From positions 124,001 through 188,000 of IMG/VR virus record IMGVR_UViG_3300033153_007973: DNA of 64,000 nucleotides; one strand, written 5' to 3'. The position numbers were made by a program, and so were the translations under genes. The notes below the pieces were generated by a model. That model was not told where the DNA came from. It searched no databases and was given only the letters and a program-made list of their open reading frames with translations. How positions within the stretch are numbered: the stretch's first letter is position 1; every line of letters begins with the position of its first letter. Shown piece by piece: positions 9,972-55,072 of the stretch.

Positions 9972-11111
9972 ATGGCTTTCAGTTTTCTCTCAGCGGAAGA
10001 TGTCACAGAAAGAATTATAGGGGAATGGCAAGCCTCAGGTATTATCAATACTGAGGATGCATCTGTATTAAGTCTCATAATGTACCCATTCCAGATAAGA
10101 ATCACAGATCTCTATGCAACTCTATTTGATATACATCAGTCACATAGAATATCTAGTGCATTTGGAATAGATCTAGATGAGATAGCCAGAGGGTTCGGTG
10201 TGATAAGAAAGACCAGTATACCAGCAGCGGACTATACATATGGCAACTTTAGATTCTATCTTCCAAATGAAATCACAGCAAAAGATTATACAATTGATAG
10301 AACAGGATTCGAAATTCCAGCTGGACAGAATGTCTCGGATGGTGTTACTAATTTCATTACATTAGATGCTGCGGTTTTCGATGCTGATTCCCATTCCGCA
10401 TTTGTAAGAATACAAGGAACAGACGCATCTGCACTTTATATTCCAGAGAATGCAATAACTGAACATCAAGTAACACCAGTAATTATATCTGAGATGGATC
10501 CCAACATAGAAGTAACAATATTATGCACAAATAACCAGCCCATAGAACTGGAATCCACTCTGGAGGATGATAACTCTCTACGAGATCGATTATATGACAG
10601 AGTAAACTCGAATGGCACAAATGATAGTGCGATCACATTCGCTCTGAAGACTTTAGGTATTCTAGATGCAGAATATGTAACAGATGCATTCGGGGTAGGA
10701 ACACTCGGTGTTAGATTAGTGACAGGAGAACCAATCATCTCTGACACCACTCTCGATGCCGCAGATGGTGTTATCAGATCTATTACTCCATATGCAAGAG
10801 TGATTCGATCAGAATATCTGGTAATAAAGATACAGTTACAATTGGATGTTGATGATGAAAGCATCATTGAAAGCACAAAGTCAGATGTTATGATTGTGAT
10901 CAAGGATTATATAGATGCGATCCCTTCCGGATCCCAACTAAATATAACAACACTTGATGAAACAATCGATAATGTTCCCAATGTAACTAGACATAATACT
11001 AGATGTCTCTTCCTTAACGAGAGACGATGTGTGTTATCTTCACAACGTTCTGCTTCTGACCAGAAGTTCATTATATCAAGAGAAGACGATGCTGTTATGT
11101 TCGTCTCATAA
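9972..11111 (+). CDS. Baseplate J-like wedge protein
   Basis: ISSAFGIDLDEIARGFGVIRK, EIPAGQNVSDG..F.T and EDDNSLRDRL motifs; 379 aa; AGGAG RBS. Confidence 0.85.
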   Translation: MAFSFLSAEDVTERIIGEWQASGIINTEDASVLSLIMYPFQIRITDLYATLFDIHQSHRISSAFGIDLDEIARGFGVIRKTSIPAADYTYGNFRFYLPNEITAKDYTIDRTGFEIPAGQNVSDGVTNFITLDAAVFDADSHSAFVRIQGTDASALYIPENAITEHQVTPVIISEMDPNIEVTILCTNNQPIELESTLEDDNSLRDRLYDRVNSNGTNDSAITFALKTLGILDAEYVTDAFGVGTLGVRLVTGEPIISDTTLDAADGVIRSITPYARVIRSEYLVIKIQLQLDVDDESIIESTKSDVMIVIKDYIDAIPSGSQLNITTLDETIDNVPNVTRHNTRCLFLNERRCVLSSQRSASDQKFIISREDDAVMFVS

Positions 11112-11120: not shown

Positions 11121-13232
11121 GTGCCTAGATCAACTGCATCACTATTTACGAGTCAGATACTAAAAGATTGGCCTGGTTGGTCCGCAGCAAAGAGAGATCT
11201 AAACTCTTTTGCGCGTAGGATGATCAATCCATTCAGTCTACTATTAGATGATCTGGAACTAATGCTACCAGAACTCGAGCGAAGCTTGACGTTAGCAACT
11301 GCTGATCCAGATGCCTTTCCATACAAAGCATGGGTGTCTGATGAAGATGATATATCTAACCATCCAAATCAATATGGATCTTCAGATCAATATCTAAATG
11401 CTGTTGACTCAGTAAATGGAAATATCTCTGGTGTAGCAATCGGTATTACCGAAGTTACACCTGATAATTTCAGAATTGCAAATCCAACTGGATTCTTCGT
11501 CTCTGGATCACTCCCAATTGATAGCCTTGGATTATCTGGCGTCCCGCAAATGGGCGAGTATGACACTACAGCAGGAGAGTATCTAATAACGACCGTCTCT
11601 GGTGAACTATCCGGGGAAACCGTTGAGCCTTCATATGCACACGGCATTACAATACCAGAACAGTTTAGTAATATTGCAGAAGCTGAGCTTGGTCTCAGAA
11701 CATTTGTAGATCCAATGTATACTGATATAACTGTTGACTTTGAAGCTGCAATATCGGGTTCAAGAATGGTGCTAGATTATCATCTAGGATCTATGCCAAC
11801 TATAACCAGAACAATAGACAATGTTACTTCTGATGGAGAAGACTTAACGACCTGGACAAATACACAAGACTGGAAAACAGTATACGAGACCAGAGATGAT
11901 CTAGATAATGATGGTATCATAGATGCACGAGAAGAACAACTAATTATTCCACATCTTGGAATAAAGCGTTCTGATGACCCTGTCGCATGGGATGAATTGT
12001 ATGCACAATATGATCTCAATGGAGACGAAGTCATTGATGAACTAGATCTCCTCAGAGTACAAACTCTTGCTAATACAATAAGACCAGATGGTGGCGATAT
12101 CCTGGAATTCGGAGCAGCTGGTGCATATTCGATCACCTTCCAGATTCCAAGAGATGGATATGCTGGAACTACTTCATTCTATAGGAATGCAGTTGGTCCA
12201 GATGTGCGGATTGATTTATCAATGGAATCATTTAGGAACGAGACATTTGGACACTTGCTTACTAATTTTGACGAAGGGTATATTGATTCAGCATATGATC
12301 CATCACTTGGAGTATTCTATTACTTGGATGAAATAAATCGTTGCATCTGGGCAGTAAAATATGACGCAATTGGTATTAATAGAGATAAGTTTAAAATCAT
12401 CCTTCCCTATGAACACAAGAATACACAATTCCGCGGGATTACATATATCGATAATCTTATATATGTTCTAGTCATCATCAATGGAAAGACATGGATATAT
12501 CTCATTGAGACTAGTATATCTAATCCAGAAGCATCGCTTGTAAAGCTCCCAGTACATGCAGGAAACATTATGAATGGGGATCCAGATATTCGTATCAGGG
12601 ATGGAGAAGGTCTCTCGTCTGGCGTTACCTCTCTTGGTTCTATAGATTCAGATAGATTAATGACAATAGATGGTGATAATCTAAAGTTTCTTTATCCTCT
12701 TGTGGATGTCTATTCGAGAGATGTTAATGAACGAACGACTAAAAGCAACCTAGTGTTTAGAGAGAAATATGATTCTCTCACACCATATCCAGAAGCAACA
12801 ATGCTTCAAACATATTTCCATCTGTGGAATGTCTTCGATGAATACGCGCTCGAGCGCGGATTAGAGAGGCATCCAGGAGAGAACAATAGTAGTCTAAAAG
12901 AAACATGCTTAGATGTATATGATAATCCATGGACAATGGACCCACAGGGTATCCATTATGGAATCGCAAGATCTTTGAGATCATCACCATATATTATAAC
13001 TGATCCACTGACATATCGATTATCATCAGCACCGGCAAGTGAGCGAATCAGCGGAACACTCTTAAGACATAACGATGTTCCTGTATGGTGGGATACAATC
13101 ACTGAAGATAAGGTATATCGAGATAGCGCATATCTTTATTCAAAGTTTATGTTCTATTCAGGTGAAACAGAGATGTTTAGAATAGAGAATGATACATTAA
13201 AGGTGAATGAGGATGCACTTATATGGATCTAA
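11121..13232 (+). CDS. Baseplate wedge protein (tail I/gp7-like C-terminal domain) with dockerin-like EF-hand pair
   Basis: HLWNVFDEYALERGLERHPGENNSSLK...GIARSL resembles tail-I-like wedge motifs. Two Ca-loop-like motifs, DLDNDGIIDARE and DLNGDEVIDELD. Follows baseplate J. Confidence 0.6.
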   Translation: MPRSTASLFTSQILKDWPGWSAAKRDLNSFARRMINPFSLLLDDLELMLPELERSLTLATADPDAFPYKAWVSDEDDISNHPNQYGSSDQYLNAVDSVNGNISGVAIGITEVTPDNFRIANPTGFFVSGSLPIDSLGLSGVPQMGEYDTTAGEYLITTVSGELSGETVEPSYAHGITIPEQFSNIAEAELGLRTFVDPMYTDITVDFEAAISGSRMVLDYHLGSMPTITRTIDNVTSDGEDLTTWTNTQDWKTVYETRDDLDNDGIIDAREEQLIIPHLGIKRSDDPVAWDELYAQYDLNGDEVIDELDLLRVQTLANTIRPDGGDILEFGAAGAYSITFQIPRDGYAGTTSFYRNAVGPDVRIDLSMESFRNETFGHLLTNFDEGYIDSAYDPSLGVFYYLDEINRCIWAVKYDAIGINRDKFKIILPYEHKNTQFRGITYIDNLIYVLVIINGKTWIYLIETSISNPEASLVKLPVHAGNIMNGDPDIRIRDGEGLSSGVTSLGSIDSDRLMTIDGDNLKFLYPLVDVYSRDVNERTTKSNLVFREKYDSLTPYPEATMLQTYFHLWNVFDEYALERGLERHPGENNSSLKETCLDVYDNPWTMDPQGIHYGIARSLRSSPYIITDPLTYRLSSAPASERISGTLLRHNDVPVWWDTITEDKVYRDSAYLYSKFMFYSGETEMFRIENDTLKVNEDALIWI

Positions 13233-15307
13233 GTGGACATATTATACTTGAGTATCTGGTAAAGAACAATTCTGAGTTCCAGAATGCTGCCGCAGGTTTC
13301 GATTTCCATGCCGGAATAGATAGCTTGGATTCTATCCCTGATGTAGAAAGCCTCCTGGATGAGAATGGTGATCCAACTCAAGAGCTATTAGATCTTCTCG
13401 CTAATCTCAGAGACGCTACACTTGGATATACTGATACAGATGCAGATCATATTCGTATACACTATTTGAATGATGAAGGATTTCTCTATAACGATGCTAA
13501 TGGTTTCTTCCTAAGTGGAGAACCTACAGCAAACATGACTGATCGGATTACAAGCCTTGAAGCTATTAATATATCTAACTGGGGACATATAAGAGCAGAT
13601 GAAAGCTGGTTAGATGCCAAAGACGTACGTTCAGGATTTACTAGAGTCTTCAATACATACTATGATAAATCTGGTGAGACAAACTCCGAAGCACGATGTG
13701 GAATAGGATTTGAAGATGATCTCAATATGATCAGGATCATGAACTTTGATCCTAATGATGTCATTGGACCAGGACAGTTCACGATTAGTGGTGATATACT
13801 CACTGGTTTAATTCGTGAACAATCAATTGATCATGGCAATATCTATAACTATGCTCCTGAATTACAGGATGGCTATCTATATCTGGATGGACAGGAAACA
13901 TATCTATATGGATCTAAGGTAACTGAGGTCTTCCCAGATCACATATCTGGTTCTGTATTATCAGGTACACCAAATGACTATGCTCCAATCATGATCAGAG
14001 TTGGAACCATAGATCCTCTGACGGCCGGATGCCAAAGTGGTCTCGTGTCTGGTCATCTGATCTTTGAGAGTGACCAATTCCATGATCATCACTCTGAAGA
14101 ATGGAATGATAATGTTACACCTCTATCTCCATTCCATAAAGCCGAAGGTTTGTCTAGAGTATATATCAGTGGTACTGAGATCGAGGATAGAGAGCTCTCT
14201 GGTAATCCTATCGCAACAAACTATTATGACCACAGTGGCACAGTACAGACAATAACCTCAGGCAGTTTAGTGGTTACATATGAAGAACTGGGTGAAGATA
14301 AATGTATTCTCCCAGATACTGATCTCTCTCCGCTGACATGGGAGGATGGAGATAGGATCTTTGCGATTCAGTCACAAGAGAAAGATCCATATAGCATTGC
14401 TGGGTATCTCACTCAGAGCGTGATCCAACCAGTAGTCTCTACAGAAGTAGTCTCTGGTGATACAAATCTTATACATGTCGTAGCTAATATACGCGATGAA
14501 GATGGCGCACCTCTCAGTGGTGTCATAGTCAGATTCGACATTGAGAAATACCTCGAGAACTTATCAGGTGACATAATATCATCTACACAATCACTTGATG
14601 AATATGAAGTTTTATCATATCCATCTGGAAACAGGGTAAGAAGCATCGAGCATAAGGCCATCCTTGATGAATCATATTCTGGGGATATATTTGACTCATA
14701 TCAGATCGGACTCTTCAGAGCGATCGAGGCAGTCCAGACATATGCAATGCCAGCCAGAGCATACTTCGATGTCTCTGGTGACATAGGCTTAGTCAAATAT
14801 GCTGAGACAGACATATTCGGAAGCGCTGAACTCCCAATCAGGATACATAACTTCAATAACTATACAACTGATAATGCAATCAGGCTATCCATCTCAGGAA
14901 CACCAACAATCTCAGACATCCTCAACTTTCGGATCCTGTCAGTTGGAACATCCATCGATGGATATGTTGATACACCAGTAGATGGGTTCTCTATACCTAA
15001 TATAGCTACAAAATTCCAGTATGTGGACTTCTCCGGAGCTACTCCAGAAATAGAGCTTAATACATACCCATACGGTGGCGAACAAATGGTGAGATTATAT
15101 ACTGCAACTGATTTCTCTGATGCGCACCATGTACCAGGACTGACCTCATTTTCTGAACCTTTGGTAACTGACAGAGGATCAGAACTGTGGTATGATGGGG
15201 AAGGTCATGCACATGTGACTTTCAATGCAGCACTAAGTGGTGGTTATGTTGGCTGGGAAATGCTAATTTCACACACAGCTGACCTAATTGGAGTAAATTA
15301 TGACTAA
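13223..15307 (+). CDS. Acidic baseplate/tail structural protein, Ser-Gly-rich, with Ig-like segment
   Basis: 694-aa ORF overlapping both neighbours. VVANIRDEDGAPLSGVIVRF is an Ig/invasin-like strand pattern. 22 SG dipeptides counted by eye. Confidence 0.6.
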   Translation: MDLSGHIILEYLVKNNSEFQNAAAGFDFHAGIDSLDSIPDVESLLDENGDPTQELLDLLANLRDATLGYTDTDADHIRIHYLNDEGFLYNDANGFFLSGEPTANMTDRITSLEAINISNWGHIRADESWLDAKDVRSGFTRVFNTYYDKSGETNSEARCGIGFEDDLNMIRIMNFDPNDVIGPGQFTISGDILTGLIREQSIDHGNIYNYAPELQDGYLYLDGQETYLYGSKVTEVFPDHISGSVLSGTPNDYAPIMIRVGTIDPLTAGCQSGLVSGHLIFESDQFHDHHSEEWNDNVTPLSPFHKAEGLSRVYISGTEIEDRELSGNPIATNYYDHSGTVQTITSGSLVVTYEELGEDKCILPDTDLSPLTWEDGDRIFAIQSQEKDPYSIAGYLTQSVIQPVVSTEVVSGDTNLIHVVANIRDEDGAPLSGVIVRFDIEKYLENLSGDIISSTQSLDEYEVLSYPSGNRVRSIEHKAILDESYSGDIFDSYQIGLFRAIEAVQTYAMPARAYFDVSGDIGLVKYAETDIFGSAELPIRIHNFNNYTTDNAIRLSISGTPTISDILNFRILSVGTSIDGYVDTPVDGFSIPNIATKFQYVDFSGATPEIELNTYPYGGEQMVRLYTATDFSDAHHVPGLTSFSEPLVTDRGSELWYDGEGHAHVTFNAALSGGYVGWEMLISHTADLIGVNYD

Positions 15308-15989: not shown

Positions 15990-18013
15990 AGCCCATTATC
16001 GCTAATAGATTAAATAACGATAACGTGAATATCGCATTTGTAAAAGCGACACGGCTCAAGTCACAGGACTGTATTCAGATCCAGGACAAGTCTATCACGT
16101 ATCCAGATAATCTACTCCCCGTACTAACTGGCACAATACAGACAGATTCAAGTCCAAGTGGCGCATTGTCTTTCCCTAATGCGACCAATGATATTATGAT
16201 CACCAATCAGTCACAATATGTATATAGTGAAGGAAGACGGATACCGCTATGGTATCAGTATTCTGTCTCAGAGAGATATCATAACACTACAGCAAGAATC
16301 GGAAACATCAAACACACTGATGTTACTGAGGGTACTGAATATAGCTTTGTACCTCAGACATCAGAAGAACTCGTGGTAAGAAATACAGTAATAGTCCAAT
16401 GGCTGGATGGTGCATCATGGACTACAATAGATACAGATGATTATGTGCTAGATCTTGGGCGCAGATCCATCAAACTTAGTGTCGCTACATATAATACTGA
16501 AACCATTAGGATTAGCTTCTATGCTATTAATCATGACATCACTGTGATTGATCAAGAGGGAGATGACCTTCCAAAAGATGAATTCATGATTGTATTAGAT
16601 AGATTCAAAACCAACCCAGGCGGAGCAGATGAATTTGCTGAAGACACAATCAATCCAACACTCAATGACTTATATTTCTGTACAATATATCTAAAGGAGA
16701 CTCCTCAGAAAGATGAGACATTCATAGTAAAGTATCGTACAGTGGATGAGAACATTGTTACAGAAGAACGCGAGGAGATTATTAATCCAATCACTATCTA
16801 TGAAGAGATCGATGCATTTACATCTGAAGATAGGAATGATATGAAGTATGTCATCGAGACAGACTATTCGATCTCAACTAAACTCAATGACCATGATACT
16901 ATATATGTGAAGCAAGTAGCCAGAAGGAACTCAAAGATTGGTCTCCTAGAACCACAGGATGTACCACATGATCAGATGTGGTTCATAGAGACAGCATCAC
17001 AAGATACAATCATTGATGGATATACATACAACCTACTGGAGGAGAATTCCTTCCAGAGAACAAATGGCTTTATCATTAAAGAGCACACTGAGATTGCTCA
17101 GATGCTCACCGCGGGTAAGATTAAGACAAAGTATAATAATATTCTATCAATCAGAAACTCGACTGGTTTCTCTGGAATCAGCATCAGAACAAACAATATA
17201 GATATAACATCATTCATTACTGACATTGATTCCAAAAATGGAATCATTCATCTTCAATCAAACTTCCCATTCCATCATGGGAATACAATAATTACATACA
17301 AGACAATGCATAAATATGTTCCATATGATAAGCTCTGTGTTAACGCATATAGAATCTTTGACTTAGTCTCAGATTATATCGTGGATAAATATGCTGTGAT
17401 ATATATGTTACCTCAGAGTGAACTGAAAGCATCGATGGGAAGAAGTATCTTCCATCTGAACATATATAAGCATCCAGAAATGCTCTTCGAAACTGTACCG
17501 AGTTATAAGCAAACCATCGATGGCGCAATTGATTACATTGTCGAAACAGATGATTTAGGACAAAGCAATCTGTATAATCTTATTCCAGAATACATCGATA
17601 GCGGCGCCGGTGATGAGTTACATCCAATCATTCTTGGTGTGGTATCTGTAACTTCCCCAGTAACTGCAGCAAGCTTGGAGTTCATTGATATCAGAAGAGC
17701 AGGTGGAGGAGTGAGAGAGTCTGAGACATATCTGGAACATCTCCATCCTGATATTCGTCATAACCTGGATATTGCACATTGGAATGCCTTCAATTATAAT
17801 CTTGACAACATTGCAGTTGTGCGCATTCCAGAAACAATCCGTACTGAATTGATCGAGAAGATGAAGCAATATGACACAAAGCTCATCAGATTGCTTAGGA
17901 ATGATCCTGATCATGATGTGGAAGAGTATGTAGAAACCTTTATCCGAAACAGAGTTCGAAAGTATCTCAGAGCAGGGTGCCATTTTAGTATCGAATATGT
18001 GGAGAGTGCATAG
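15986..18013 (+). CDS. Baseplate structural protein
   Basis: 675-aa coupled ORF. The C-terminal FIDIRRAGGG...LDIAHW motif resembles baseplate proteins of large myoviruses (from memory). Confidence 0.55.
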   Translation: MKPIIANRLNNDNVNIAFVKATRLKSQDCIQIQDKSITYPDNLLPVLTGTIQTDSSPSGALSFPNATNDIMITNQSQYVYSEGRRIPLWYQYSVSERYHNTTARIGNIKHTDVTEGTEYSFVPQTSEELVVRNTVIVQWLDGASWTTIDTDDYVLDLGRRSIKLSVATYNTETIRISFYAINHDITVIDQEGDDLPKDEFMIVLDRFKTNPGGADEFAEDTINPTLNDLYFCTIYLKETPQKDETFIVKYRTVDENIVTEEREEIINPITIYEEIDAFTSEDRNDMKYVIETDYSISTKLNDHDTIYVKQVARRNSKIGLLEPQDVPHDQMWFIETASQDTIIDGYTYNLLEENSFQRTNGFIIKEHTEIAQMLTAGKIKTKYNNILSIRNSTGFSGISIRTNNIDITSFITDIDSKNGIIHLQSNFPFHHGNTIITYKTMHKYVPYDKLCVNAYRIFDLVSDYIVDKYAVIYMLPQSELKASMGRSIFHLNIYKHPEMLFETVPSYKQTIDGAIDYIVETDDLGQSNLYNLIPEYIDSGAGDELHPIILGVVSVTSPVTAASLEFIDIRRAGGGVRESETYLEHLHPDIRHNLDIAHWNAFNYNLDNIAVVRIPETIRTELIEKMKQYDTKLIRLLRNDPDHDVEEYVETFIRNRVRKYLRAGCHFSIEYVESA

Positions 18014-20703
18014 TGGCTGACATATTAGAACCGAGATATTATAAGCAACCTTATATTGAGAATTATCTCAAAGAGATCAAGGCATATCTATTCAAGACTA
18101 TAAGTAGTCCTGAGACCCAAATTGCCCCAATTCTCAGTGAGGTAACACAGCATATAGAAACAGCGATGGATCAAGTCAGAGTCAATGGGCAAGCATCTGT
18201 TCCATTTGAATTTGAATCTCAGAAGCTACGATCTAATAACTACAATGAGATGATTGAGAATATCCAAATCGACCTTGCTGTGCTATATGATAATCTCTCG
18301 AGCTTCGTAACGATTCTAACCCAGACAGTCATCATGATGGACAGAGTTATTAGTAAGATGATTAGCAAAGTAGATGATCAGACAAGTCGTATCCAGAGTC
18401 TGGAGGCATTGAGCAATCTCCATGTGGAATTTGATGAGGTTATACATAACTCATTTACTTCTGATGATAATACATATCCAATTCGCGACTCATCCACGAT
18501 TAACAAGGATACCGCTGGAGTTATTACATTAAACACCGTGAATGTCGATGATATTGTCAAAGATGAACTTGGATATGATCTATATCTGAAGCCAGTCACC
18601 CGGGGCGCTTTGACCGTCATCAATAATGAAACACTTGCTGCTGAATCATTTGTCAATACAATGGACATGGATATCATATCTGATTCTCCTGCAGGAATAG
18701 AATATGCAATTATCATTGTTCTTCCAGCAGCAAAATGGATCAATAATATTTCATTTGGGCAGTTTTCATCCCATGCTCTTACCATAGAAGGAATCTTCTA
18801 TGTTAGTGATATTAATACAAGTTCCGATTCTACTAACTGGACAGAGATCAACACACGAACCGATGTGTTCAACTATCGAAACTTTAACTTTAATTTCGAG
18901 CAGGTCGATGCACGCAGTATTATGATTAAGGTCAAGCAAGAGAAGTATAAGATCAAGAAGATAGCTGCAGACATGGCCAGCAGACTATTCTTTAGTGGAG
19001 AGACAAGAAGCTTTAGTGATGTCCTTCATGAAATAGGTAAGAATAGCACACAGAATACTAGCGGTTTCAACCAGGTTGTGCCAACTATTGTCCGAGAGAG
19101 TATCGATAAGAAGATCAAAGTGCTCATCCAAAATGCTATTGATACTCTTAATCTAGACTTGAACTCAGAGGACGGTAACAAGGGAGATTTGACATCCACA
19201 TATTGGTACAACATTGGCATGTTCGATCTTAGGATATATAATAATAGATATCAGGATGATAATATATATAGATCACAGACATTCGGTGGACGTGGTGACA
19301 TTACAGCGGTTACTCTTGTTAAGAATGACAATGTCCCTGATGGAACACTTGCAAATTATTATCTTGAAGTAGGCGGTGATGTACATCGATTCGATTCAAA
19401 TGATGAATGGATGACAGATATCATCACTATAAATGATACAACTGTTAAGACATATAACACAGATCTATTTCTAGATTCTGCAATAAACATTGAAGTAACT
19501 AGAAATGGGTCGATTGTTGGTGGCGCCAACTATTCGATTCGTAAACCATATGCAACATCACAAATGGCATATGGTATCACATTTGACAACTCATATACAC
19601 TGGGTCTTGGTGACTTCGTTACGATCAAATATAAAGTTGCTTCAGTCAACGATCTTGGAAATCCATATAGTCCTAACACACTTAACATTGTGGATATAGG
19701 TGGAAAGCCAAATCTTCGCAACCAGCTTGAAGATGGTAATCTTCAGAGAATGATCATAGAGACACAGAATGGTGACTTCGTTTCTTACAGCATCACTAAT
19801 GATGAAGCACACCCGTTCCTCATCCCATCTAGTGCATCTGGAGATATCCCCGAGTTTGGATATGGTATAAAGAGTAAGAAGAGCATGAATGATTCCATAT
19901 TCCCTCCATATGTAGATCTAGTTGCACCATATCTTTATGGAATCTCAGGAGAATATGTTACTCCTCCGCAAAGAGCGATCTACTATGGTATTATCAATGA
20001 GAATATCAGTGGAGGCGGAGGTACATCATTCAATACTGCATATGATTACATACCAGGTTCTCTACATGTATATATGTCGGGAAGACCTTTGATCACATCC
20101 GAGTATGATACAGATACATCATATCCCGGTAATGATAAGAATGCATTCACAACACCTCTGCACTCTGGTATCGATGGTATTATGAAGACATCATATATCC
20201 CACTCAGTGGAGATGTTGGTGCTCAGCAAAGTAACATTGCTGAACAGAACAGGACAGAACTTTTCTTTGGTACCGATGAAGATAACGTCATTACTCTGGA
20301 GTTTGGGATCTATATCGATCCGCGAATCATTGGTGACACATCTACTGTTCCTCCAATCTGGAGAGAGGGAGATGGAATCTTTGTGCTTGAGTATAATAAT
20401 GATGTAGTATATGAACCGGTTATCATTACCATCAGAGGCAAAAGAGCACGAAACCTTACTGACTATGTGGGTAATACGAAGCCTGAGTTTACAGAGTTTA
20501 GTCCAGCCAGGAGAAACTACGAATATTATGTAGAGGCAAATCGTGTATACTTCAATACAAATATAGATCTTGAGATTACAGTAAGATACTATGTGCTCCC
20601 CGATATCTTAGCTTCTGTAATAAAACTATACAGAACAGATAGAAGCATTGATACGGCCACGCCGGCCATCTATGACTATAGCAACTTTATCGATAAGGCA
20701 TAA
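18013..20703 (+). CDS. Baseplate arm-like structural protein (paralog 1)
   Basis: N-terminal coiled coil SNNYNEMIENIQIDLAVLY, beta-rich body, C-terminal TPAIYDY motif shared with three downstream genes. Confidence 0.6.
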   Translation: MADILEPRYYKQPYIENYLKEIKAYLFKTISSPETQIAPILSEVTQHIETAMDQVRVNGQASVPFEFESQKLRSNNYNEMIENIQIDLAVLYDNLSSFVTILTQTVIMMDRVISKMISKVDDQTSRIQSLEALSNLHVEFDEVIHNSFTSDDNTYPIRDSSTINKDTAGVITLNTVNVDDIVKDELGYDLYLKPVTRGALTVINNETLAAESFVNTMDMDIISDSPAGIEYAIIIVLPAAKWINNISFGQFSSHALTIEGIFYVSDINTSSDSTNWTEINTRTDVFNYRNFNFNFEQVDARSIMIKVKQEKYKIKKIAADMASRLFFSGETRSFSDVLHEIGKNSTQNTSGFNQVVPTIVRESIDKKIKVLIQNAIDTLNLDLNSEDGNKGDLTSTYWYNIGMFDLRIYNNRYQDDNIYRSQTFGGRGDITAVTLVKNDNVPDGTLANYYLEVGGDVHRFDSNDEWMTDIITINDTTVKTYNTDLFLDSAINIEVTRNGSIVGGANYSIRKPYATSQMAYGITFDNSYTLGLGDFVTIKYKVASVNDLGNPYSPNTLNIVDIGGKPNLRNQLEDGNLQRMIIETQNGDFVSYSITNDEAHPFLIPSSASGDIPEFGYGIKSKKSMNDSIFPPYVDLVAPYLYGISGEYVTPPQRAIYYGIINENISGGGGTSFNTAYDYIPGSLHVYMSGRPLITSEYDTDTSYPGNDKNAFTTPLHSGIDGIMKTSYIPLSGDVGAQQSNIAEQNRTELFFGTDEDNVITLEFGIYIDPRIIGDTSTVPPIWREGDGIFVLEYNNDVVYEPVIITIRGKRARNLTDYVGNTKPEFTEFSPARRNYEYYVEANRVYFNTNIDLEITVRYYVLPDILASVIKLYRTDRSIDTATPAIYDYSNFIDKA

Positions 20704-26801: not shown

Positions 26802-29800
26802 ATGGCAGAGAAACGTTTACAACTTCCACTAAACTTTTCAGCTACTCCTCCAGGTGAGGGCTATGTCGGGACTCAGCATCAGAATGATGCGTTCGTTCTT
26901 AAGAATGCTCTAAGAGGGGAGCTCTTTAATTCATATGAGAGTATCTTTGCAGAAATCTATGAATTCTTTGGTGATATTCATTCCGATAAACTTGGTACCA
27001 AGAACAATATTGGTGACGCATTTGAGTCAGTATTCGAACAGCTGAATGCAAGTACTACTACATTTCTAACATATTATTTCTTCGCCCAGATGGGTGGCGG
27101 AATTGTTCTTCCTGATCCTGATCACCAGACAACTAGTGATGAGGAAGCACATGAATTTGATAGTAATAATACATCAACGATCCCTACCATTCAGATGGAG
27201 ATCAGTGGTGGTACCGGCGTACTTGGACTTGGAAAAACAACTAGTGCAGTTGTAGTAGTAGACGATGAAACATCGCATATATTTGATTCTATTGATGAAG
27301 ACATCGTTGGTAATATGACTGCAAGTGATGATACTAATGATTGGACAGGTGGTGAACTTCAAAATGCATCCACTGGCTCATGTACTCTAGATCACCATCA
27401 TATTAAGGGCAACGCTGTTACTCCAGATCTGGGCGCCGGTCCAGTAGCAAGAACTATTATTGGTACAACCGGAACCAGCCCAGCTAAAGTCAACTATACA
27501 TGGAATGATGGTGATTTCGATTTCGATCCTGAGACAGGTGAGATCACCAACTTCTCTGCTAATCCCGCAGCTGTCACATTCTACTATGTATACTTTCAGT
27601 ACAGACGTGATGTGGTTGTCCTCAAACAAGGCACATCCAACAATGATCGAGTACTCATTCGTAAGGGCACTCCTGAGGATGAACTTTCTGAGACCACTAC
27701 TAATATCATTGCGACCACAGATGAGCCCCTCTATGAAGTAGTCATCAGACCAGAGAACGATGAGTTCGACCACTTCGGCACCAGTGGTGCTACCACGGTG
27801 CTACCAGATAATCAGATCGTTGACCTAAGAGTTGGTCGGCGTGATGAAGAAGCCAGAAAAGGCCTCACAAATGGTGTCGTACAGTTCGAACATGATCGAT
27901 TCATGTTCGACTTCCGTGATGACACCATGAAGGCATATGTTAAAGCAATGGACGCGATCGTTGATGGTGCATTGGTACGAACAGAACCTACTATCATTAC
28001 TGTTCCTGCTGCTGATACAGATACCAGATTCGACATAATCCGTACTGCGAAAGACGGTACCGTAGATGTTGTCTCCGGATCATATGGTCTTCCAGTCGTA
28101 CCTGAGGCAGGAGATGGGTATGCCCCTCTTGCCGCAGTAGAGATCCTGTCTGGCCAGACCACTCTGTCAGGTAGCATTAAGCCAACGATGGCATTGCCTG
28201 CACAGAATAAGAGTCTTGGAGCAAACGTTCTATGGACAAAGGACAGACCTCTCTATGGATTTGATGTCCAAGATCAAGCAGACTTTACTCTCTCACTGTC
28301 TGGAATGCCTAACCTAGCTAAGGAAGCTACGAGTCATATTGCATCTATGGAGATCAGTGGCGGCCGTGTACTGATCAATGGAGTGTTTGTAGACGTCCCA
28401 GACATGACATCACCATATAGTTTGAATATGAGCACATGGGATAATGGTGATTATCAATTGATCTGGATGGGAGTCAACAAGTCCACACTTAAGATCGATA
28501 CCAGGGGTCAGAAATATGAATCCACTGAGAGATGGGAAGCACTAAGCCCACTCGGGTGGGAATCATATAAGATGATCAATGGTCAAGGTTCTTGGGATGA
28601 CTTCGTTCCTCTATATGTATTCATAGCAGCAAAGGATACTACATCAAAGATTGCTCTATTGTCTGACGAAAGAGATTTCCATCCAGTCTTGCGCCCACGG
28701 ATTAAGACTGGTATTATTTGGAAGACAAGGATTTATGGAGAGGACTGGTCGAATGAAAGGATCATCCTAAGACATGATATTGGAGTACCTGATTATGCAG
28801 TATTCATTCAGCCCATTGGTGTCTATCCTGCAGATCCTGTAGACCCAGTACCAGCTATCGAATACATCAGTAACAATCAGTGCACAATACATATCTCAAC
28901 GGACAAACGCCTACCCAGTACATTATCTCTCTGGAGTAAAACTGAGGATGTTGCATCAATAACTAATCCTGAAGTTGGTCCCCCCGGTACTATTTTAAAT
29001 TCACCGACCTTCCCTGTAGGAAAGTTTGGGAGGGGAGTGGGAATGGATTATGCTGGATCGGTTTTTAATGGTGTATATCATGCTCTACCGTATCCTGCAT
29101 TCAATACTGATTTAGGATGTTTTGAGGTATGGGTTAAGCCTGTTGGATTTAGTATCGTAGATTCGAAGTCTGTTGGTGGACCTAATGGTGCATATTCAAT
29201 CTTTGAGTGGAAGGTTCCTGGTTCAGGCGGTCACTATGTTTATGTTAGATTTCATACAACTAATGGGCTGGAATGGCTTAATGGCGCCGCGGATCAGTGG
29301 ATATCAGTCATTGCTGCTATTGATATCCCAGATGGTACTTGGGCTCATCTTGCGTTTACTTGGGACAGGAGCCATGCCACGAAGAAACAGCGAGTATTCT
29401 TCAATGGCATAGAAGTAGCTTCACGCAATGTTGCATGGGCAGCTGCGACTGATTCTTCGACACGAGAATTTCGTGTCGGGTATGGTAATGAAGGTGGGAA
29501 TGTGTGGTGGGAAGGTGTTCTTGATAATTATAAGTTCTGGGATTATCAGAAGCTTGATTTCTCGGACAGAAATACCGAGGGATACATTGCTGCTACTGAC
29601 ACGTTGCAAGGTTTCAGGTGGTTAGCAATCGCTGAAACAGATATGATCGAATATGGTACGATCAAAGCCGGTTATGATGCTGATACATCACAGATCCTGC
29701 CGATTAACTTCTCTGACAAAATGTACGATGGAGACGTTACATATCCAGCAATCCTCCTATCTAATATCTATCATGATGATTGGGAGAATGATAAAGCACT

Positions 29801-30218
29801 CACCGCATACCAAGAATCCCTTGGTACAAGTGGTGAGCTCATAGGTATCAGCGCCAGGATTCATGACAATGACATAAGTGGTTATCCTACGCCACATTAC
29901 ATTAACTATGCTATATTCCCAGACTCAATGCTAATGGCTCGCGGGAATAGCGCACTAACGATTGCTGATGCTACCTACGAACAATCAGGCTATGTCAGTG
30001 AAGTAGATGACCTCGATATCAACCGCATAACTCTAGCACAGCACTACGAGTTGGATGATTCCGTCCCTAGCGGCGTCGCAACCAGCATACAGAGAGCAAC
30101 TTCTGGAAACGGTGATCAACTCAGGATCGTCGGAGTTCCAGGAGATTATAATATCAACTGGTTTACACTAAGAGAACCAGTAGCCCCAATTCGTCCATAT
30201 GGACGTCAAGATCTATAG
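26802..30218 (+). CDS. Tail fibre/baseplate attachment protein with inserted LamG (concanavalin A-like) domain
   Basis: Repeated 'R.D.V....G.P......P...PL..V' attachment-like segments. LamG hallmarks GKFG.G, GCFEVWVKP, WAHLAFTWD, RVFFNGIEV and GVLDNYK. Confidence 0.75.
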   Translation: MAEKRLQLPLNFSATPPGEGYVGTQHQNDAFVLKNALRGELFNSYESIFAEIYEFFGDIHSDKLGTKNNIGDAFESVFEQLNASTTTFLTYYFFAQMGGGIVLPDPDHQTTSDEEAHEFDSNNTSTIPTIQMEISGGTGVLGLGKTTSAVVVVDDETSHIFDSIDEDIVGNMTASDDTNDWTGGELQNASTGSCTLDHHHIKGNAVTPDLGAGPVARTIIGTTGTSPAKVNYTWNDGDFDFDPETGEITNFSANPAAVTFYYVYFQYRRDVVVLKQGTSNNDRVLIRKGTPEDELSETTTNIIATTDEPLYEVVIRPENDEFDHFGTSGATTVLPDNQIVDLRVGRRDEEARKGLTNGVVQFEHDRFMFDFRDDTMKAYVKAMDAIVDGALVRTEPTIITVPAADTDTRFDIIRTAKDGTVDVVSGSYGLPVVPEAGDGYAPLAAVEILSGQTTLSGSIKPTMALPAQNKSLGANVLWTKDRPLYGFDVQDQADFTLSLSGMPNLAKEATSHIASMEISGGRVLINGVFVDVPDMTSPYSLNMSTWDNGDYQLIWMGVNKSTLKIDTRGQKYESTERWEALSPLGWESYKMINGQGSWDDFVPLYVFIAAKDTTSKIALLSDERDFHPVLRPRIKTGIIWKTRIYGEDWSNERIILRHDIGVPDYAVFIQPIGVYPADPVDPVPAIEYISNNQCTIHISTDKRLPSTLSLWSKTEDVASITNPEVGPPGTILNSPTFPVGKFGRGVGMDYAGSVFNGVYHALPYPAFNTDLGCFEVWVKPVGFSIVDSKSVGGPNGAYSIFEWKVPGSGGHYVYVRFHTTNGLEWLNGAADQWISVIAAIDIPDGTWAHLAFTWDRSHATKKQRVFFNGIEVASRNVAWAAATDSSTREFRVGYGNEGGNVWWEGVLDNYKFWDYQKLDFSDRNTEGYIAATDTLQGFRWLAIAETDMIEYGTIKAGYDADTSQILPINFSDKMYDGDVTYPAILLSNIYHDDWENDKALTAYQESLGTSGELIGISARIHDNDISGYPTPHYINYAIFPDSMLMARGNSALTIADATYEQSGYVSEVDDLDINRITLAQHYELDDSVPSGVATSIQRATSGNGDQLRIVGVPGDYNINWFTLREPVAPIRPYGRQDL
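28911..29585 (+). repeat. LamG cassette copy 1
   Basis: LPSTLSLWSK...DFSDRNTEGY; homologous to 34698-35369 and 35601-36263 with the same borders. Confidence 0.85.
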
Positions 30219-30229
30219 GAGGATAGAAG

Positions 30230-30475: not shown

Positions 30476-30511
30476 AACACAGATACACCAATCTATTTCT
30501 AAGGATACCGA

Positions 30512-34017: not shown

Positions 34018-34018
34018 G

Positions 34019-34331: not shown

Positions 34332-36743
34332 ATGGGCAGCATTATAGGTCACAAAGTCAATAATACTATTTTCGGCATAGCCACAAAGGGCTATGTCGAT
34401 GATGCCATATCTGGCATTGCATCAACTGCATATAACTATGTATCCACCTGGGACGCTACTACCAACACTCCAGCACTAGCTAGTGGTGCTGGTACCAAGG
34501 GAGATGTCTACTACGTGAATGTCGGTGGTAGCACGAACTTAGACGGAATCACAGACTGGGTAGCGGGCGACTCTGCTGCATTCAATGGTTCTGTCTGGAC
34601 CAAGTGGGATCATACCGATCAGATCACCAGTATATTCGGTCGACAAGGTATTATTGAAGCAGTAAGCGGAGACTATGATGCCGCCGAGATCTCTTCTCTT
34701 CCAGACACATTAAACTACTGGAGCAAGATGGGGTCTACTATAGAGATTACCAATCCAGTGGTTGGCCCGGTTACGACATTGGACGCGACAGTTGTATACG
34801 AAACTGGCAAGTTTGATAATGGCGTGCGGGGTACAGTAGCAGATGAGGAAAAACCCATATCGTTCCCTACTATATCTCCATCTTTCGATTTTGCACAAGG
34901 CTGTATTGAAATGTGGATCCGTCCCGTAGGATACAATATTGTTAATGGTATTAATGATGCCGGCGATGGCGAAGGCAAGTATTTATGGCAGTGGATGAGT
35001 CCAGCACCACATAACTATGTGCACTATTTTAAATTCGGCGTGATTGGCATCGGTTGGCAAACCAATTCTGCTGCCGGTCAAACTCATTGGGATGATGAAC
35101 TTCCTGGATTAGATATTGCTGATGGTGAACTTGCTCATATTGCATTAGTCTGGGATCGCACACACCTCACCAAGAAACGTAGAGTTTACCTGAATGGAAT
35201 TGAAGTTGGATCAAACAATGACCAGTGGAGTGATGAGGACATGACTGGCGCTACGATGACTATAGGAAGCGCCACTGGTGGAACTCGTATTCTCGAAGGC
35301 CAGATGGATAATATGAAATGGTGGGATTTTGCACAAACTGATTTCTCAGGAAAAGACATAGAAGGATTCGCCACTGTTGCTAATCATCTCGCCAGTAGCG
35401 AGCTTCACAGAGAGATCAATGATTCAGAATATGCTGATACTGATTTATGGAGTGCTGACCAGATAAGTGGACATGTAGCAACTGAGATCGGATCTATTAG
35501 TGATGCTGAAGATTCAGTTAGCGGTGTTCTCCTGGGGGACGGAACCGGAGCATATTCCGAGGCAGATGCAGGTGACCTTCCTGTCACCATACAGGGAAGT
35601 CCTCCAAGCACATTAAATTACTGGAGTAAGATGGGTACTCCCGGAGAGATCACCAGTCCGGAGGTCGGTCCTACTACAACTCTGACTGCGACAGTTGCAT
35701 ACGAAACTGGAAAGTTTGACAATGGTGCTAGAACTACAGTGGTGGATGAGGCAAAAGACATATCATTTCCAACAGTATCTCCTTCGTTTGATCATGCACA
35801 AGGTTGTATCGAGATGTGGATCAGGCCTGTTGGATTTAATATCGTTAATGGTGCATATGATGCCGGTGGTCCACCGAAGTTTCTGTGGTATTGGAACAGT
35901 GCATATGAGCAACATTTTAGATTCCAAGGAAGTGGCGGTGGTATTTATTGGAATCTTAATGATGCTGGTGGATCATATGCATGGTCTGGTGAACTTCCTG
36001 GATTAGATATTGCTGATGGTGAGTTAGCACATATTGCATTCGTATGGGATCGCACACATAGCACAAAGAAACGTAGAATCTATCTGAATGGTGTAGAAGT
36101 CGGCTCAGATAATACAGCATGGGTCGATGAGGACATGACTGCTGGGACAATGTATATTGGAACAGATACTGGTGGGTATACAGGTTTTTACGGCCAGATG
36201 GATAATATGAAATGGTGGGACTTCGCGCAGACTGATTTCTCTAGTAGAGATACAGAAGGATTTAGTTCAATAGGCGATGCCCAAACTTACCTCGATGATA
36301 ATACTGCAGGTATTACAGCAAACGTCGCAAGCATTGCAACAAATGCTGCTTACATAGATACCGTCAGTGGTGATGTCAATACGCATTCTGCTGACTCAGA
36401 CAAGCACTCTCAGGTATATAGCTTCTTCATTCCTGGTGATGCCGTGTCAGGCACGGCAATCCAGGAGGCGGAAGTTGCCTTCTCTGGAGATATCTCTCTG
36501 GTAAGAGCTACAGCTAAGGGACCAGTAGGTGGGAATCTGGATATCGATATTGACCTAAATGACACAACAATCTTTACCGACCAGGATAAACGACCACAAA
36601 TCATCTCTGGATCTCTGTCTGATATCAGTGATACACCAGATATTATAACTGTTGTACCTGGTGATATCCTGGGCGTGAACGTGGATGCTGTCGATCCTGT
36701 AGATCCTGGAAACAAGGTAAAAATAGCCATCGTCGTGGTATAA
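34332..36743 (+). CDS. Tail fibre/adhesin with two tandem LamG domains
   Basis: ATKGYVD and WDATTNTPALASG.GTKGDVYYV...DGITDW fibre motifs, two LamG repeats, one LWSADQISG repeat and a C-terminal beta-sandwich. Confidence 0.8.
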   Translation: MGSIIGHKVNNTIFGIATKGYVDDAISGIASTAYNYVSTWDATTNTPALASGAGTKGDVYYVNVGGSTNLDGITDWVAGDSAAFNGSVWTKWDHTDQITSIFGRQGIIEAVSGDYDAAEISSLPDTLNYWSKMGSTIEITNPVVGPVTTLDATVVYETGKFDNGVRGTVADEEKPISFPTISPSFDFAQGCIEMWIRPVGYNIVNGINDAGDGEGKYLWQWMSPAPHNYVHYFKFGVIGIGWQTNSAAGQTHWDDELPGLDIADGELAHIALVWDRTHLTKKRRVYLNGIEVGSNNDQWSDEDMTGATMTIGSATGGTRILEGQMDNMKWWDFAQTDFSGKDIEGFATVANHLASSELHREINDSEYADTDLWSADQISGHVATEIGSISDAEDSVSGVLLGDGTGAYSEADAGDLPVTIQGSPPSTLNYWSKMGTPGEITSPEVGPTTTLTATVAYETGKFDNGARTTVVDEAKDISFPTVSPSFDHAQGCIEMWIRPVGFNIVNGAYDAGGPPKFLWYWNSAYEQHFRFQGSGGGIYWNLNDAGGSYAWSGELPGLDIADGELAHIAFVWDRTHSTKKRRIYLNGVEVGSDNTAWVDEDMTAGTMYIGTDTGGYTGFYGQMDNMKWWDFAQTDFSSRDTEGFSSIGDAQTYLDDNTAGITANVASIATNAAYIDTVSGDVNTHSADSDKHSQVYSFFIPGDAVSGTAIQEAEVAFSGDISLVRATAKGPVGGNLDIDIDLNDTTIFTDQDKRPQIISGSLSDISDTPDIITVVPGDILGVNVDAVDPVDPGNKVKIAIVVV
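34698..35369 (+). repeat. LamG cassette copy 2
   Basis: LPDTLNYWSK...DFSGKDIEGF. Confidence 0.9.
35601..36263 (+). repeat. LamG cassette copy 3
   Basis: PPSTLNYWSK...DFSSRDTEGF. Shares identical nt blocks with copy 2, e.g. gaacttcctggattagatattgctgatggtga. Confidence 0.9.
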
Positions 36744-48828: not shown

Positions 48829-48831
48829 CTA

Positions 48832-49521: not shown

Positions 49522-49523
49522 TC

Positions 49524-50285: not shown

Positions 50286-50286
50286 C

Positions 50287-51573: not shown

Positions 51574-51577
51574 GATA

Positions 51578-54930: not shown

Positions 54931-55061
54931 TATTAGGGATAGTCATTGCATTCTGTGTTGGGCTGCTCGCTGGATGGGTACTGAGATTCTTTTGGATCAG
55001 GTGGCACTACAACAACTGTCGATTTGCACCTATAAGAAGTCTATTTGGAACAGAAGATTAA
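54927..55061 (+). CDS. Small single-pass membrane protein (not in ORF track)
   Basis: The GTG overlaps the upstream TGA (GTGA). Translates MILGIVIAFCVGLLAGWVLRFFWIRWHYNNCRFAPIRSLFGTED; its TAA overlaps the next RBS. Confidence 0.6.
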   Translation: MILGIVIAFCVGLLAGWVLRFFWIRWHYNNCRFAPIRSLFGTED

Positions 55062-55072
55062 AGGAGAATAAT

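What the first reader, a model, noticed from the sequence alone, without database searches (positions are those of the whole stretch)
13223..15307. Non-repetitive baseplate protein with 22 independent Ser-Gly sites
Unlike the fibres, this protein has no internal repeats, so duplication cannot explain the SG excess. SG occurs 22 times versus 5 for the reverse GS. The serines use both AGY (cta agt gga, att agt ggt) and TCN (ata tct ggt, tta tca ggt, ttc tcc gga) codons, which do not interconvert by one substitution. This points to repeated convergent gain under protein-level selection and is the cleanest evidence for a modification motif.
Basis: seen in the sequence. Interest (0 to 1): 0.8.

Follow-up and report, generated by a model that had tools for sequence, protein, structure and literature searches.

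The report
Ser-Gly motif in phage baseplate protein
A baseplate-module protein of an uncultured jumbo phage carries four times more Ser-Gly pairs than chance allows, in a fixed five-residue loop motif that it shares with the phage's tail fibres and that lies near a large sugar-transferase gene cluster, so the motif may mark sites where the virus coats its tail with sugars, although this is not proven.

Summary
ORF 13223-15307 (694 aa) has 22 SG against 5.3 expected, and none of 200,000 shuffles reached 22. It has no internal repeats, and the excess exists only in the coding frame. SG is the core of a longer motif, hydrophobic-S-G-polar-(hydrophobic/T/P): 15 copies against 0.96 expected, about 20 times the density in control phages. 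The same motif is enriched in eight non-homologous tail, baseplate and fibre proteins of the window and is nearly absent from the non-structural genes.

The protein family is an orphan with 17 relatives, all metagenomic. Sixteen of them are SG-enriched. Nine SG columns are widely conserved and 40 are singletons. SG serines are more conserved than other serines. In a partly confident model the sites lie in inter-strand loops just before a beta-strand. One sister lineage lost the enrichment, so the fold does not need SG.

Downstream of the fibres lies a tightly packed cluster of soluble glycosyltransferases and glycan-tailoring enzymes. Multi-site O-glycosylation is my leading explanation (about 0.45) but is unproven. 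A purely structural loop motif remains a serious rival (about 0.35). The key co-occurrence test with glycosyltransferases could not be completed.

The parts
13223..15307 (+). The finding: a 694-aa orphan protein of the baseplate module. It has 22 SG and 15 copies of the motif [LIVFMYWA]-S-G-x-[LIVFMYWTP], and is predicted to be a string of beta-sandwich domains.
   Evidence: statistics and repeat test. (no Pfam, PHROG, GenBank-phage or PDB match). (model with mean pLDDT 55; SG lies in loops before strands; only generic beta-sandwich fold matches).
11121..13232 (+). Upstream partner protein (703 aa) with a Dockerin-like Ca-binding segment and a phrog_21059 'virion structural protein' segment. 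Its end overlaps the target's start by 10 nt. It is fused to the target family in relatives P0015 and P0017. It is second in SG/motif enrichment (9 SG against 3.7; motif 6 against 0.71).
9972..11111 (+). Baseplate_J / gp6-like wedge protein that anchors the module. It is not SG-enriched.
18013..20703 (+). 896-aa protein of the conserved module, with moderate motif enrichment (5 against 0.84).
26802..30218 (+). 1138-aa protein containing Laminin_G_3, with motif enrichment (6 against 1.19).
34332..36743 (+). 803-aa fibre-like protein containing Laminin_G_3, with motif enrichment (7 against 1.26).
37316..44979 (+). Three consecutive modular fibre proteins of 278, 560 (Mtd_N N-terminus) and 1714 aa (beta-helix domain). 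They hold 78 SG and 46 motif copies, spread over about five different contexts within each repeated module.
47045..55864 (+). Glycan cluster of 11 tightly packed genes: GT1, GT2, GT2, polysaccharide pyruvyl transferase, B12-binding radical SAM enzyme, methyltransferase, hexapeptide acyltransferase, Glyco_trans_1_2 (CgeB-like), methyltransferase, GT2, and a weak GT2. All are predicted soluble. No Wzx, Wzy or oligosaccharyltransferase-like protein is present.
60095..62836 (-). 912-aa protein with a GT4 domain, of a class common in phages. It lies on the opposite strand, in the operon that runs on to the replication genes. Any link to the motif is uncertain.

Best explanation
The Ser of the motif hydrophobic-S-G-polar-(hydrophobic/T/P) is an acceptor site for cytoplasmic O-glycosylation by the phage's own soluble glycosyltransferases. 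The motif sits in short exposed loops that lead into beta-strands. It occurs on this beta-sandwich baseplate-periphery protein, on its fused-in-relatives partner (11121-13232), and on the tail fibres. The enzymes, encoded directly after the fibre genes, would build a methylated, acetylated or pyruvylated glycan on many serines of these tail proteins before or during assembly. That would give the distal tail a sugar coat for shielding, for stability, or for adhesion to host or particle surfaces. Shown: the motif, its statistics, its restriction to tail proteins, its conservation and turnover, its loop position in a partly confident model, and the adjacent enzyme cluster. Inferred: that the enzymes act on proteins, that this motif is what they recognise, and the biological role.
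For: (1) 22 SG against 5.3 expected, and 15 full motifs against 0.96 expected, at protein level only and without repeats. (2) The same five-residue context is found in the target, its distant relatives and the unrelated fibres, but not around SG in control phages, not around SG in the window's other ORFs, and not around other xG or Sx dipeptides of the same proteins. Hydrophobic at -1: 73/61/56% against 37%. Polar at +2: 77/54/59% against 37%. Hydrophobic/T/P at +3: 91/77/69% against 47%. (3) The motif is enriched in eight non-homologous tail proteins (85 copies). Only 2 copies occur in the 18 ORFs downstream of 46.4 kb. Control density is 0.105 per 100 aa against 2.16 in the target. This points to a factor acting in trans at the level of the phage rather than to one fold. 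(4) The excess is Ser-specific, with TG at 1 against 4.1 expected. (5) SG serines are invariant at 13/22 positions against 9/39 for other serines in close relatives (p = 0.007). SG density is kept at z 4-8.6 across the family while sites turn over. (6) P0011, the well-supported sister of an SG-rich clade, has only 3 SG, so the fold does not require SG. In that lineage the syntenic interval between the baseplate module and the primase-helicase is about 7.6 kb, with no fibre or GT block. In the window's phage it is about 39 kb. (7) The 11 glycan genes are soluble, overlap or abut each other, and follow the fibre genes after a 78-nt gap. No lipid-carrier export machinery is present, which fits direct cytoplasmic transfer to a macromolecule. 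(8) 15 of 16 SG in model regions with pLDDT of at least 50 are in inter-strand loops. (9) There is precedent: TibC/AAH heptosylate many serines, not threonines, of a beta-rich surface protein in the cytoplasm (PMC4358343). Phage-encoded virion glycosylation is also documented (Freeman 2023, as cited in PMC12619734).
Against: There is no direct evidence of any glycan. No known glycosyltransferase is reported to use this sequon. The GTs match no characterised protein O-GT and could act on DNA or on host polysaccharide. Gly is more conserved than Ser at the sites, and Ser exchanges with D, N or G, as at ordinary turns. In lineages L016 and L017 only the target ortholog is enriched, while the SG-poor lineage still has one protein at z 3.2, so covariation across a genome is weak. 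The GT status of all other SG-rich lineages is unknown because their contigs are short. The structural model is only partly confident (mean pLDDT 55).
Confidence: 0.45

Rival explanations
1. The motif is purely structural. Hydrophobic-S-G-polar-hydrophobic would be the preferred way, in this clade's beta-sandwich and fibre domains, to end a loop and start a beta-strand (a tight turn or bulge needing Gly, with Ser capping the backbone). It would be kept by folding or assembly constraints with no chemical modification, and the nearby glycosyltransferases would serve another purpose.
For: In the model, 10 of 16 confident SG sites have the Gly within 2 residues of the next strand start (background 16%, p = 3e-5). 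Gly is more conserved than Ser (19/22 against 13/22), and Ser swaps with the classic turn formers D, N and G. Nine SG columns are conserved across the whole family. One of them (PLSGV, residue 432) lies in the stretch that aligns to a Big_1/CarboxypepD_reg Ig-like domain in P0016. The enrichment follows this protein family in every lineage, while most neighbouring proteins are at background.
Against: The P0011 lineage keeps the fold with 3 SG. Beta-rich fibres and other proteins of T4 and a megaphage show no such excess. DG and NG, the usual turn dipeptides, are not enriched (7 against 5.6; 2 against 3.1). The same motif recurs in non-homologous proteins of different predicted architecture in one phage but not in its enzymes. 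Forty singleton columns indicate that sites move.
Confidence: 0.35
2. The motif is recognised in trans, but not for glycosylation. It would be a site for another serine modification (phosphorylation, acylation, ADP-ribosylation), or a docking motif for an assembly chaperone or partner protein.
For: The evidence for a clade-level factor acting in trans is the same as for the best explanation. Ser-specificity fits any hydroxyl-directed chemistry. The cluster also holds an acyltransferase, methyltransferases and a radical SAM enzyme.
Against: No kinase, ADP-ribosyltransferase or chaperone was recognised in the window. The acyl-, methyl- and pyruvyl-transferases are interleaved with six GTs, the usual make-up of a glycan-tailoring cluster. 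Between 15 and 47 docking sites per protein is implausible for a chaperone.
Confidence: 0.1
3. The excess is an artefact of composition, cryptic repeats, or a DNA-level motif.
For: The protein is rich in both Ser (8.8%) and Gly (8.6%).
Against: All shuffles preserve composition and none comes near 22. The GS count is at expectation. The other five reading frames show 2-6 matches against 22 in frame. No off-diagonal similarity exceeds that of shuffles. The effect is independent of GC content, from 32% to 49% across relatives' loci.
Confidence: 0.01

Closest known systems
Virion glycosylation in mycobacteriophages (Freeman et al. 2023, as summarised in PMC12619734)
   Same: Phage-encoded glycosyltransferases lie next to structural genes. 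Glycans on virion proteins are proposed to act as a shield.
   Different: In that system the glycans sit at the C-termini of capsid and tail-tube subunits of siphoviruses of actinobacteria. Here the candidate sites are 15-47 internal loop motifs on baseplate and fibre proteins of a jumbo myovirus-like phage. The enzyme set is much larger (six or seven GTs plus pyruvyl-, methyl- and acyl-transferases and a B12-radical SAM enzyme). Nothing has been shown experimentally.
Bacterial autotransporter heptosyltransferases (AAH/TibC acting on AIDA-I/TibA; PMC4358343)
   Same: Cytoplasmic, multi-site, serine-only (not threonine) O-glycosylation of a beta-rich surface protein. By my count of the printed peptide, one mapped TibA site (Ser-313) is followed by Gly. 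A strand-loop-strand acceptor motif has been described for AAH; I recall this from memory and did not check it.
   Different: No heptosyltransferase (GT9-like) domain was found in the window. The substrates here are phage tail proteins, not 19-residue-repeat beta-helices. The sugar is unknown.
Fibril glycosylation gene clusters of Megavirinae giant viruses (PMC10117803)
   Same: A virus-encoded cluster combines several GTs with a pyruvyltransferase, a methyltransferase and an acetyltransferase, dedicated to decorating the virion's outer fibres.
   Different: Those are eukaryotic giant viruses whose clusters include nucleotide-sugar synthesis genes. No such synthesis genes were seen in this window, and no acceptor sequon is defined there.
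Ser-Gly xylosylation sites of eukaryotic proteoglycans (general knowledge, not checked here)
   Same: A Ser-Gly dipeptide serves as an O-glycan acceptor, often with acidic neighbours. Here D or E is at +2 in 32% of sites, and the protein is very acidic (111 acidic against 35 basic residues).
   Different: That is a secretory-pathway enzyme family, of which no domain was detected here. The flanking hydrophobic residues are not part of that consensus.
Ig-like / beta-sandwich decoration domains on phage virions (Big_1, Big_2, CarboxypepD_reg)
   Same: The model is a string of beta-sandwiches. Relative P0016 has Big_1/CarboxypepD_reg/MG4 domains where it aligns to target residues 397-458. Atlas feature hits point to Phage-tail_3/CarboxypepD_reg clusters, as weak leads only.
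   Different: The target itself reaches no Pfam threshold. SG enrichment is not a known feature of those domains.

Membership tests
Phage baseplate wedge/periphery proteins | Encoded within the baseplate gene module next to gp25-like and gp6/Baseplate_J genes | tested here: met
   Baseplate_J is at 9972-11111. A weak GPW_gp25 hit is in the syntenic L005. The gene order is identical in every relative's contig.
Phage baseplate wedge/periphery proteins | Sequence or fold homology to a characterised baseplate protein | tested here: not met
   There is no Pfam, PHROG, GenBank-phage or PDB sequence match. Foldseek against PDB gives only generic beta-sandwich strings at TM of 0.13 or less.
Phage virion glycoproteins (mycobacteriophage type) | Phage-encoded glycosyltransferases adjacent to structural genes | tested here: met
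   Eleven glycan genes at 47045-55864 follow the fibre genes on the same strand.
Phage virion glycoproteins (mycobacteriophage type) | Glycan demonstrated on the virion protein | not testable with these tools
   This needs mass spectrometry or glycan staining. The phage is uncultured, and no sequencing run was listed.
Phage virion glycoproteins (mycobacteriophage type) | Acceptor sites at the C-terminus of capsid or tail-tube subunits | tested here: not met
   The candidate sites are spread from residue 4 to 672 of a baseplate-module protein and along the fibres.
BAHT (AAH/TibC) autotransporter glycosylation | Serine-only acceptor sites in short loops between beta-strands | tested here: inconclusive
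   The sequence excess is Ser-specific and the sites are in loops in a model of mean pLDDT 55. Whether they are modified is unknown.
BAHT (AAH/TibC) autotransporter glycosylation | A heptosyltransferase (GT9-type) enzyme encoded nearby | tested here: not met
   Pfam scans of the window's major ORFs (42 scanned, all of 107 aa or more) found GT1/GT4, GT2 and Glyco_trans_1_2 domains only.
Lipid-carrier (en bloc) protein glycosylation (PglB/PglL type) | A membrane oligosaccharyltransferase, flippase or initiating phosphoglycosyltransferase | tested here: not met
   None of the 16 proteins encoded between 46.4 and 62.8 kb has a TM-like segment, and there are no such Pfam hits.
Bacterial Ig-like domain proteins (Big_1 / CarboxypepD_reg) | Pfam domain hit above threshold | tested here: not met
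   The target has 0 Pfam families. Only the distant relative P0016 has these domains, where it aligns to target residues 397-458.

The most novel reading that the evidence does not exclude
Hydrophobic-S-G-polar-(hydrophobic/T/P) is a genuine short sequon for a phage-encoded, cytoplasmic, serine-specific protein O-glycosylation system. That system would coat the baseplate periphery and tail fibres of a clade of uncultured jumbo phages with a tailored (methylated, acetylated, pyruvylated) glycan. Sequon density would be maintained by selection while individual sites turn over, and would be lost in lineages that lose the enzyme block. This would be the first defined acceptor motif for phage virion glycosylation and the first case on receptor-binding tail structures.
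Probability: 0.4. Interest if true: 0.85.

Novelty: new variant of a known kind. Interest (0 to 1): 0.62.

Why it matters
Virion glycosylation by phage-encoded enzymes is documented only for a few actinobacteriophages, on capsid and tail-tube termini. A sequence-readable acceptor motif on baseplate and fibre proteins would have three consequences.

- Candidate phage glycoproteins could be predicted directly from metagenomes.
- It would give a function to the glycosyltransferase clusters that are common but unexplained in large phages.
- It would raise the possibility that phages modulate adsorption, stability or recognition by sugar-coating the very structures that contact the host.

Even if the motif is purely structural, it defines a previously undescribed, strongly constrained loop signature in an orphan family of baseplate proteins. 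The work also shows that the target and its upstream neighbour form one functional unit, since they are fused in some phages.

Tried and rejected
- **DNA-level motif:** rejected. There are 22 in-frame matches against 2-6 in each other frame.
- **Internal repeats:** the first self-BLASTP test was insensitive, since it also missed the obvious fibre repeats. I replaced it with windowed Smith-Waterman against shuffles. The target has no repeats, and the positive control was detected.
- **AGY/TCN switching as evidence of convergence:** rejected as uninformative. The rate is the same at non-SG serines.
- **GC or composition drift:** rejected. Enrichment spans loci of 32-49% GC.
- **AlphaFold with 3 sequences:** unusable, pLDDT 31. 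With 17 sequences it is partly usable, pLDDT 55.
- **Fold or role assignment:** the Foldseek PDB search, PDB sequence/profile searches for the target and three GTs, NCBIfam and ESM Atlas gave no specific assignment.
- **Searches that added nothing new:** the profile search of the 5.8-billion-protein database, the IMG/VR scans, which returned only this phage's own contigs, and GenBank phages, which gave no relatives of the target or of Baseplate_J.
- **Co-occurrence of SG density with GT genes across lineages:** I attempted this by contig look-ups, by walking along a contig and by the single metagenome scan. Only the SG-poor lineage sits on a long contig, so the test stays at n = 1.
- **Read-level analysis:** not possible. 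No sequencing run was listed.
- **Promoter/terminator scan of the cluster:** no better than chance.


Full report
**1. Observation**

It contains 22 Ser-Gly and 5 Gly-Ser dipeptides. With 61 Ser and 60 Gly, 5.27 SG are expected. In 200,000 shuffles the mean was 5.28 (sd 2.10) and the maximum was 16. Shuffling only within 40-residue blocks gave the same result. The Poisson tail is 4.5e-8, or 1.8e-5 after correcting for all 400 dipeptides.

SG is the most over-represented dipeptide in the protein. 36% of all serines are followed by glycine. The usual turn dipeptides are not enriched: DG is 7 against 5.6 expected, NG is 2 against 3.1, and TG is 1 against 4.1.

The quoted codons are all present, and both serine codon families are used at SG sites (AGT 8, TCT 8, TCA 5, TCC 1). 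The hexamer pattern for Ser-Gly occurs 22 times in frame but only 2-6 times in each of the other five frames. The signal therefore belongs to the protein, not the DNA.

The claim of no internal repeats holds. My first self-BLAST test turned out to be insensitive. In a windowed Smith-Waterman test the best off-diagonal score was 36, against a shuffled maximum averaging 39.5. A fibre used as positive control scored 248 against 42.

**2. SG is the core of a longer motif**

Around SG the target has three positional preferences:

| Position | Target | 11 distant relatives | Window's fibres | 362 SG in control phages |
|---|---|---|---|---|
| -1 hydrophobic | 73% | 61% | 56% (77% counting Ala) | 37% |
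| +2 polar | 77% | 54% | 59% | 37% |
| +3 hydrophobic, Thr or Pro | 91% | 77% | 69% | 47% |

SG in the window's other ORFs, and other xG or Sx dipeptides in the same proteins, look like the controls.

Written as [LIVFMYWA]-S-G-x-[LIVFMYWTP], the motif occurs 15 times in the target against 0.96 expected. That is 2.16 per 100 aa, against 0.105 per 100 aa in 63,093 residues of control ORFs.

**3. Distribution in the window**

By plain SG count, five ORFs exceed z = 3 and three exceed z = 5: the target, 38153-39835 and 39835-44979. By the full motif, eight proteins are significantly enriched: 11121, 13223, 18013, 26802, 34332, 37316, 38153 and 39835. Together they hold 85 copies. All eight are tail, baseplate or fibre proteins.

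Other structural proteins are at background, among them the 2585-aa giant protein, 15986, 20706 and 22241. The 18 ORFs downstream of 46.4 kb hold 2 copies in total.

Even so, each module uses SG in about five different contexts.

As an outside control I used T4 positions 120-169 kb (including gp34-37) and 200 kb of the 634-kb megaphage LR745206. None of their 184 ORFs of at least 150 aa exceeds z = 3, and overall observed/expected SG is 1.03-1.27. In the window the ratio is 1.99.

**4. What the protein is**

The window is positions 124,001-188,000 of a 234,008-bp IMG/VR contig, so this is a jumbo phage. It has no cultured relatives.

The target has no Pfam, PHROG, GenBank-phage or PDB match. 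It lies in a gene module that is conserved in every relative's contig. The order is:

1. a giant 2585-2845-aa protein
2. a protein of about 320 aa
3. a gp25-like protein
4. Baseplate_J (gp6-like)
5. a protein of about 690 aa
6. the target
7. proteins of about 225, 660, 900, 515 and 870 aa

An exhaustive HMMER search of 1.84 billion representatives found 16 relatives, and a word-based search added one more. All are metagenomic.

Two relatives, P0015 and P0017, are fusions. P0015's N-terminal ~620 residues align to the upstream neighbour 11121-13232 (E = 7e-27) and carry its Dockerin-like and phrog_21059 signatures. Its C-terminal half is the target family. The two window genes overlap by 10 nt. 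They are therefore one functional unit, and in every SG-rich lineage they are the two most SG-enriched proteins of the module.

With 17 sequences AlphaFold gave a partly confident model: mean pLDDT 55, with 189 residues at 70 or above. It is beta-rich from about residue 205 onward. Foldseek found only generic strings of beta-sandwich domains. Relative P0016 has Big_1/CarboxypepD_reg/MG4 domains where it aligns to target residues 397-458. The protein is very acidic, with 111 acidic against 35 basic residues.

**5. Evolution of the sites**

Sixteen of the 17 relatives, down to 21-25% identity, are SG-enriched (z 3.9-8.6). P0011 is the exception, with 3 SG against 1.6 expected and 1 motif copy.

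In the two close relatives (57% identity) 13 of the 22 SG are invariant. SG serines are invariant more often than other serines (13/22 against 9/39, Fisher p = 0.007). SG glycines are conserved even more often (19/22).

Across 14 aligned members, 219 SG occupy 85 columns. Nine columns are shared by six or more members and 40 are singletons. Alignment error at low identity inflates this turnover to some extent. At variable sites the Gly usually stays and the Ser alternates with D, N, A, G or T.

Codon-family switches are no more frequent at SG serines than at other conserved serines: 11 of 24 columns against 18 of 39.

A maximum-likelihood tree places P0011 as the sister, with 100/100 support, of the SG-rich clade P0009/P0012/P0014. 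Enrichment is present on both sides of the midpoint root. The simplest reading is loss in the P0011 lineage, and the fold does not require SG.

**6. Position in the structure**

Sixteen SG lie in model blocks with pLDDT of at least 50. Fifteen of them are in inter-strand loops. Ten have the Gly within two residues of the start of the next strand, against a background of 16% (p = 3e-5). The motif is thus strand end or loop, then S-G, then a polar residue, then a strand.

**7. The neighbourhood**

After the fibres, following a 78-nt gap, come 11 genes that overlap or abut each other (gaps -32 to +43 nt): GT1, GT2, GT2, polysaccharide pyruvyl transferase, a B12-binding radical SAM enzyme, a methyltransferase, a hexapeptide acyltransferase, a CgeB-like Glyco_trans_1_2, a methyltransferase, GT2 and a weak GT2.

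None has a TM-like segment, and no flippase, polymerase, oligosaccharyltransferase or initiating phosphoglycosyltransferase is present. That fits stepwise cytoplasmic transfer onto a macromolecule rather than export on a lipid carrier. None of the enzymes matches a named equivalog or a solved structure.

A 912-aa protein with a GT4 domain, of a class common in phages, lies on the opposite strand. Just beyond the window come an intein-containing helicase and a primase-helicase.

In the SG-poor P0011 lineage the same baseplate module is followed by the primase-helicase after about 7.6 kb, with no fibre or GT block. In the window's phage that interval is about 39 kb. This is one lineage only. The rest of its 137-kb contig was not seen, and one protein there is moderately SG-enriched (z 3.2).

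**8. Interpretation**

Chance, composition, repeats and DNA motifs are excluded.

The same five-residue, Ser-specific motif is enriched in non-homologous tail proteins of one phage, is absent from its enzymes and from control phages, and is dispensable for the fold in a sister lineage. This argues for a factor acting in trans. With a large soluble glycan-building cluster packed against the fibre genes, multi-site O-glycosylation is the most economical candidate. It has mechanistic precedent in the serine-only cytoplasmic heptosylation of autotransporters (PMC4358343). It has biological precedent in mycobacteriophage virion glycosylation (cited in PMC12619734) and in the fibril-glycosylation clusters of Megavirinae, which likewise include a pyruvyltransferase (PMC10117803).

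The structural reading remains serious. The sites are turn positions with a conserved Gly, a core of sites is ancient, and the enrichment follows this family more faithfully than it follows genomes. No known enzyme uses this sequon, and nothing here shows a sugar. My estimates are:

| Explanation | Confidence |
|---|---|
| Glycosylation | 0.45 |
| Purely structural motif | 0.35 |
| Another modification or docking role | 0.10 |

**9. Verdict**

If it is true, this is a new variant of phage virion glycosylation with a readable sequon on receptor-binding structures. The decisive experiment is co-expression with the cluster followed by glycoproteomics.

Noticed in passing
window 11121-13232 and 13223-15307; P0015, P0017: The target and its upstream neighbour are separate genes with a 10-nt overlap here, but they are fused into one polypeptide of 1259-1396 aa in two metagenomic relatives. 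P0015's N-terminal half aligns to the neighbour at E = 7e-27.
   Followed up: yes
window 11121-13232, residues 260-314: A Dockerin-type (EF-hand-like Ca-binding) segment sits inside a virion structural protein and is conserved in the fused relative P0015 (residues 269-328). It scores just below Pfam's threshold.
   Followed up: partly
window 37316-44979: The fibre modules carry recurrent His-x-His-Asp strings directly after SG (for example SGHxHD). From memory, these are reminiscent of the metal-binding HxH motifs of T4 fibre tips. ORF 38153 starts with an Mtd_N domain.
   Followed up: no
window 50254-51573: A B12-binding radical SAM enzyme sits inside the glycan cluster. Its best but sub-threshold matches are to HpnJ, ApyD and C- or P-methyltransferases. 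It might C-methylate a sugar, or conceivably act on a peptide.
   Followed up: partly
L019 217-3393 (about 5.4-8.6 kb beyond the window's right end, opposite strand): A helicase gene is interrupted by an intein (Intein_splicing/HINT between the ResIII and Helicase_C domains). It is followed by a DnaG/DnaB primase-helicase.
   Followed up: partly
window 114-7871: A giant 2585-aa ORF with no Pfam hit opens the baseplate module. Its ortholog in L005 is 2845 aa. It is not SG-enriched. It may be a tape-measure or hub protein.
   Followed up: no
window 30512-31798; L016 332-1084: A calcineurin-like metallophosphoesterase is encoded among the tail genes. In the P0009 lineage a 250-aa Metallophos protein lies immediately upstream of the target ortholog.
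   Followed up: no
L005 5725-6825: In the P0004 lineage the enlarged gp25-like protein (366 aa) is itself SG-enriched (8 against 2.1, z 4.1), unlike its counterpart in the window. The set of SG-rich proteins therefore differs between lineages.
   Followed up: partly
L010 11958-14171: In the otherwise SG-poor P0011 lineage one 737-aa protein after the module has 11 SG against 4.3 expected (z 3.2).
   Followed up: no
window 36744-37315, 55865-56163, 34018-34331: These three are the long non-coding gaps (572, 299 and 314 nt) in this otherwise tightly packed + strand gene array. A fourth gap of similar size (293 nt, 30219-30511) is not listed here. I did not examine them for promoters or RNAs.
   Followed up: no
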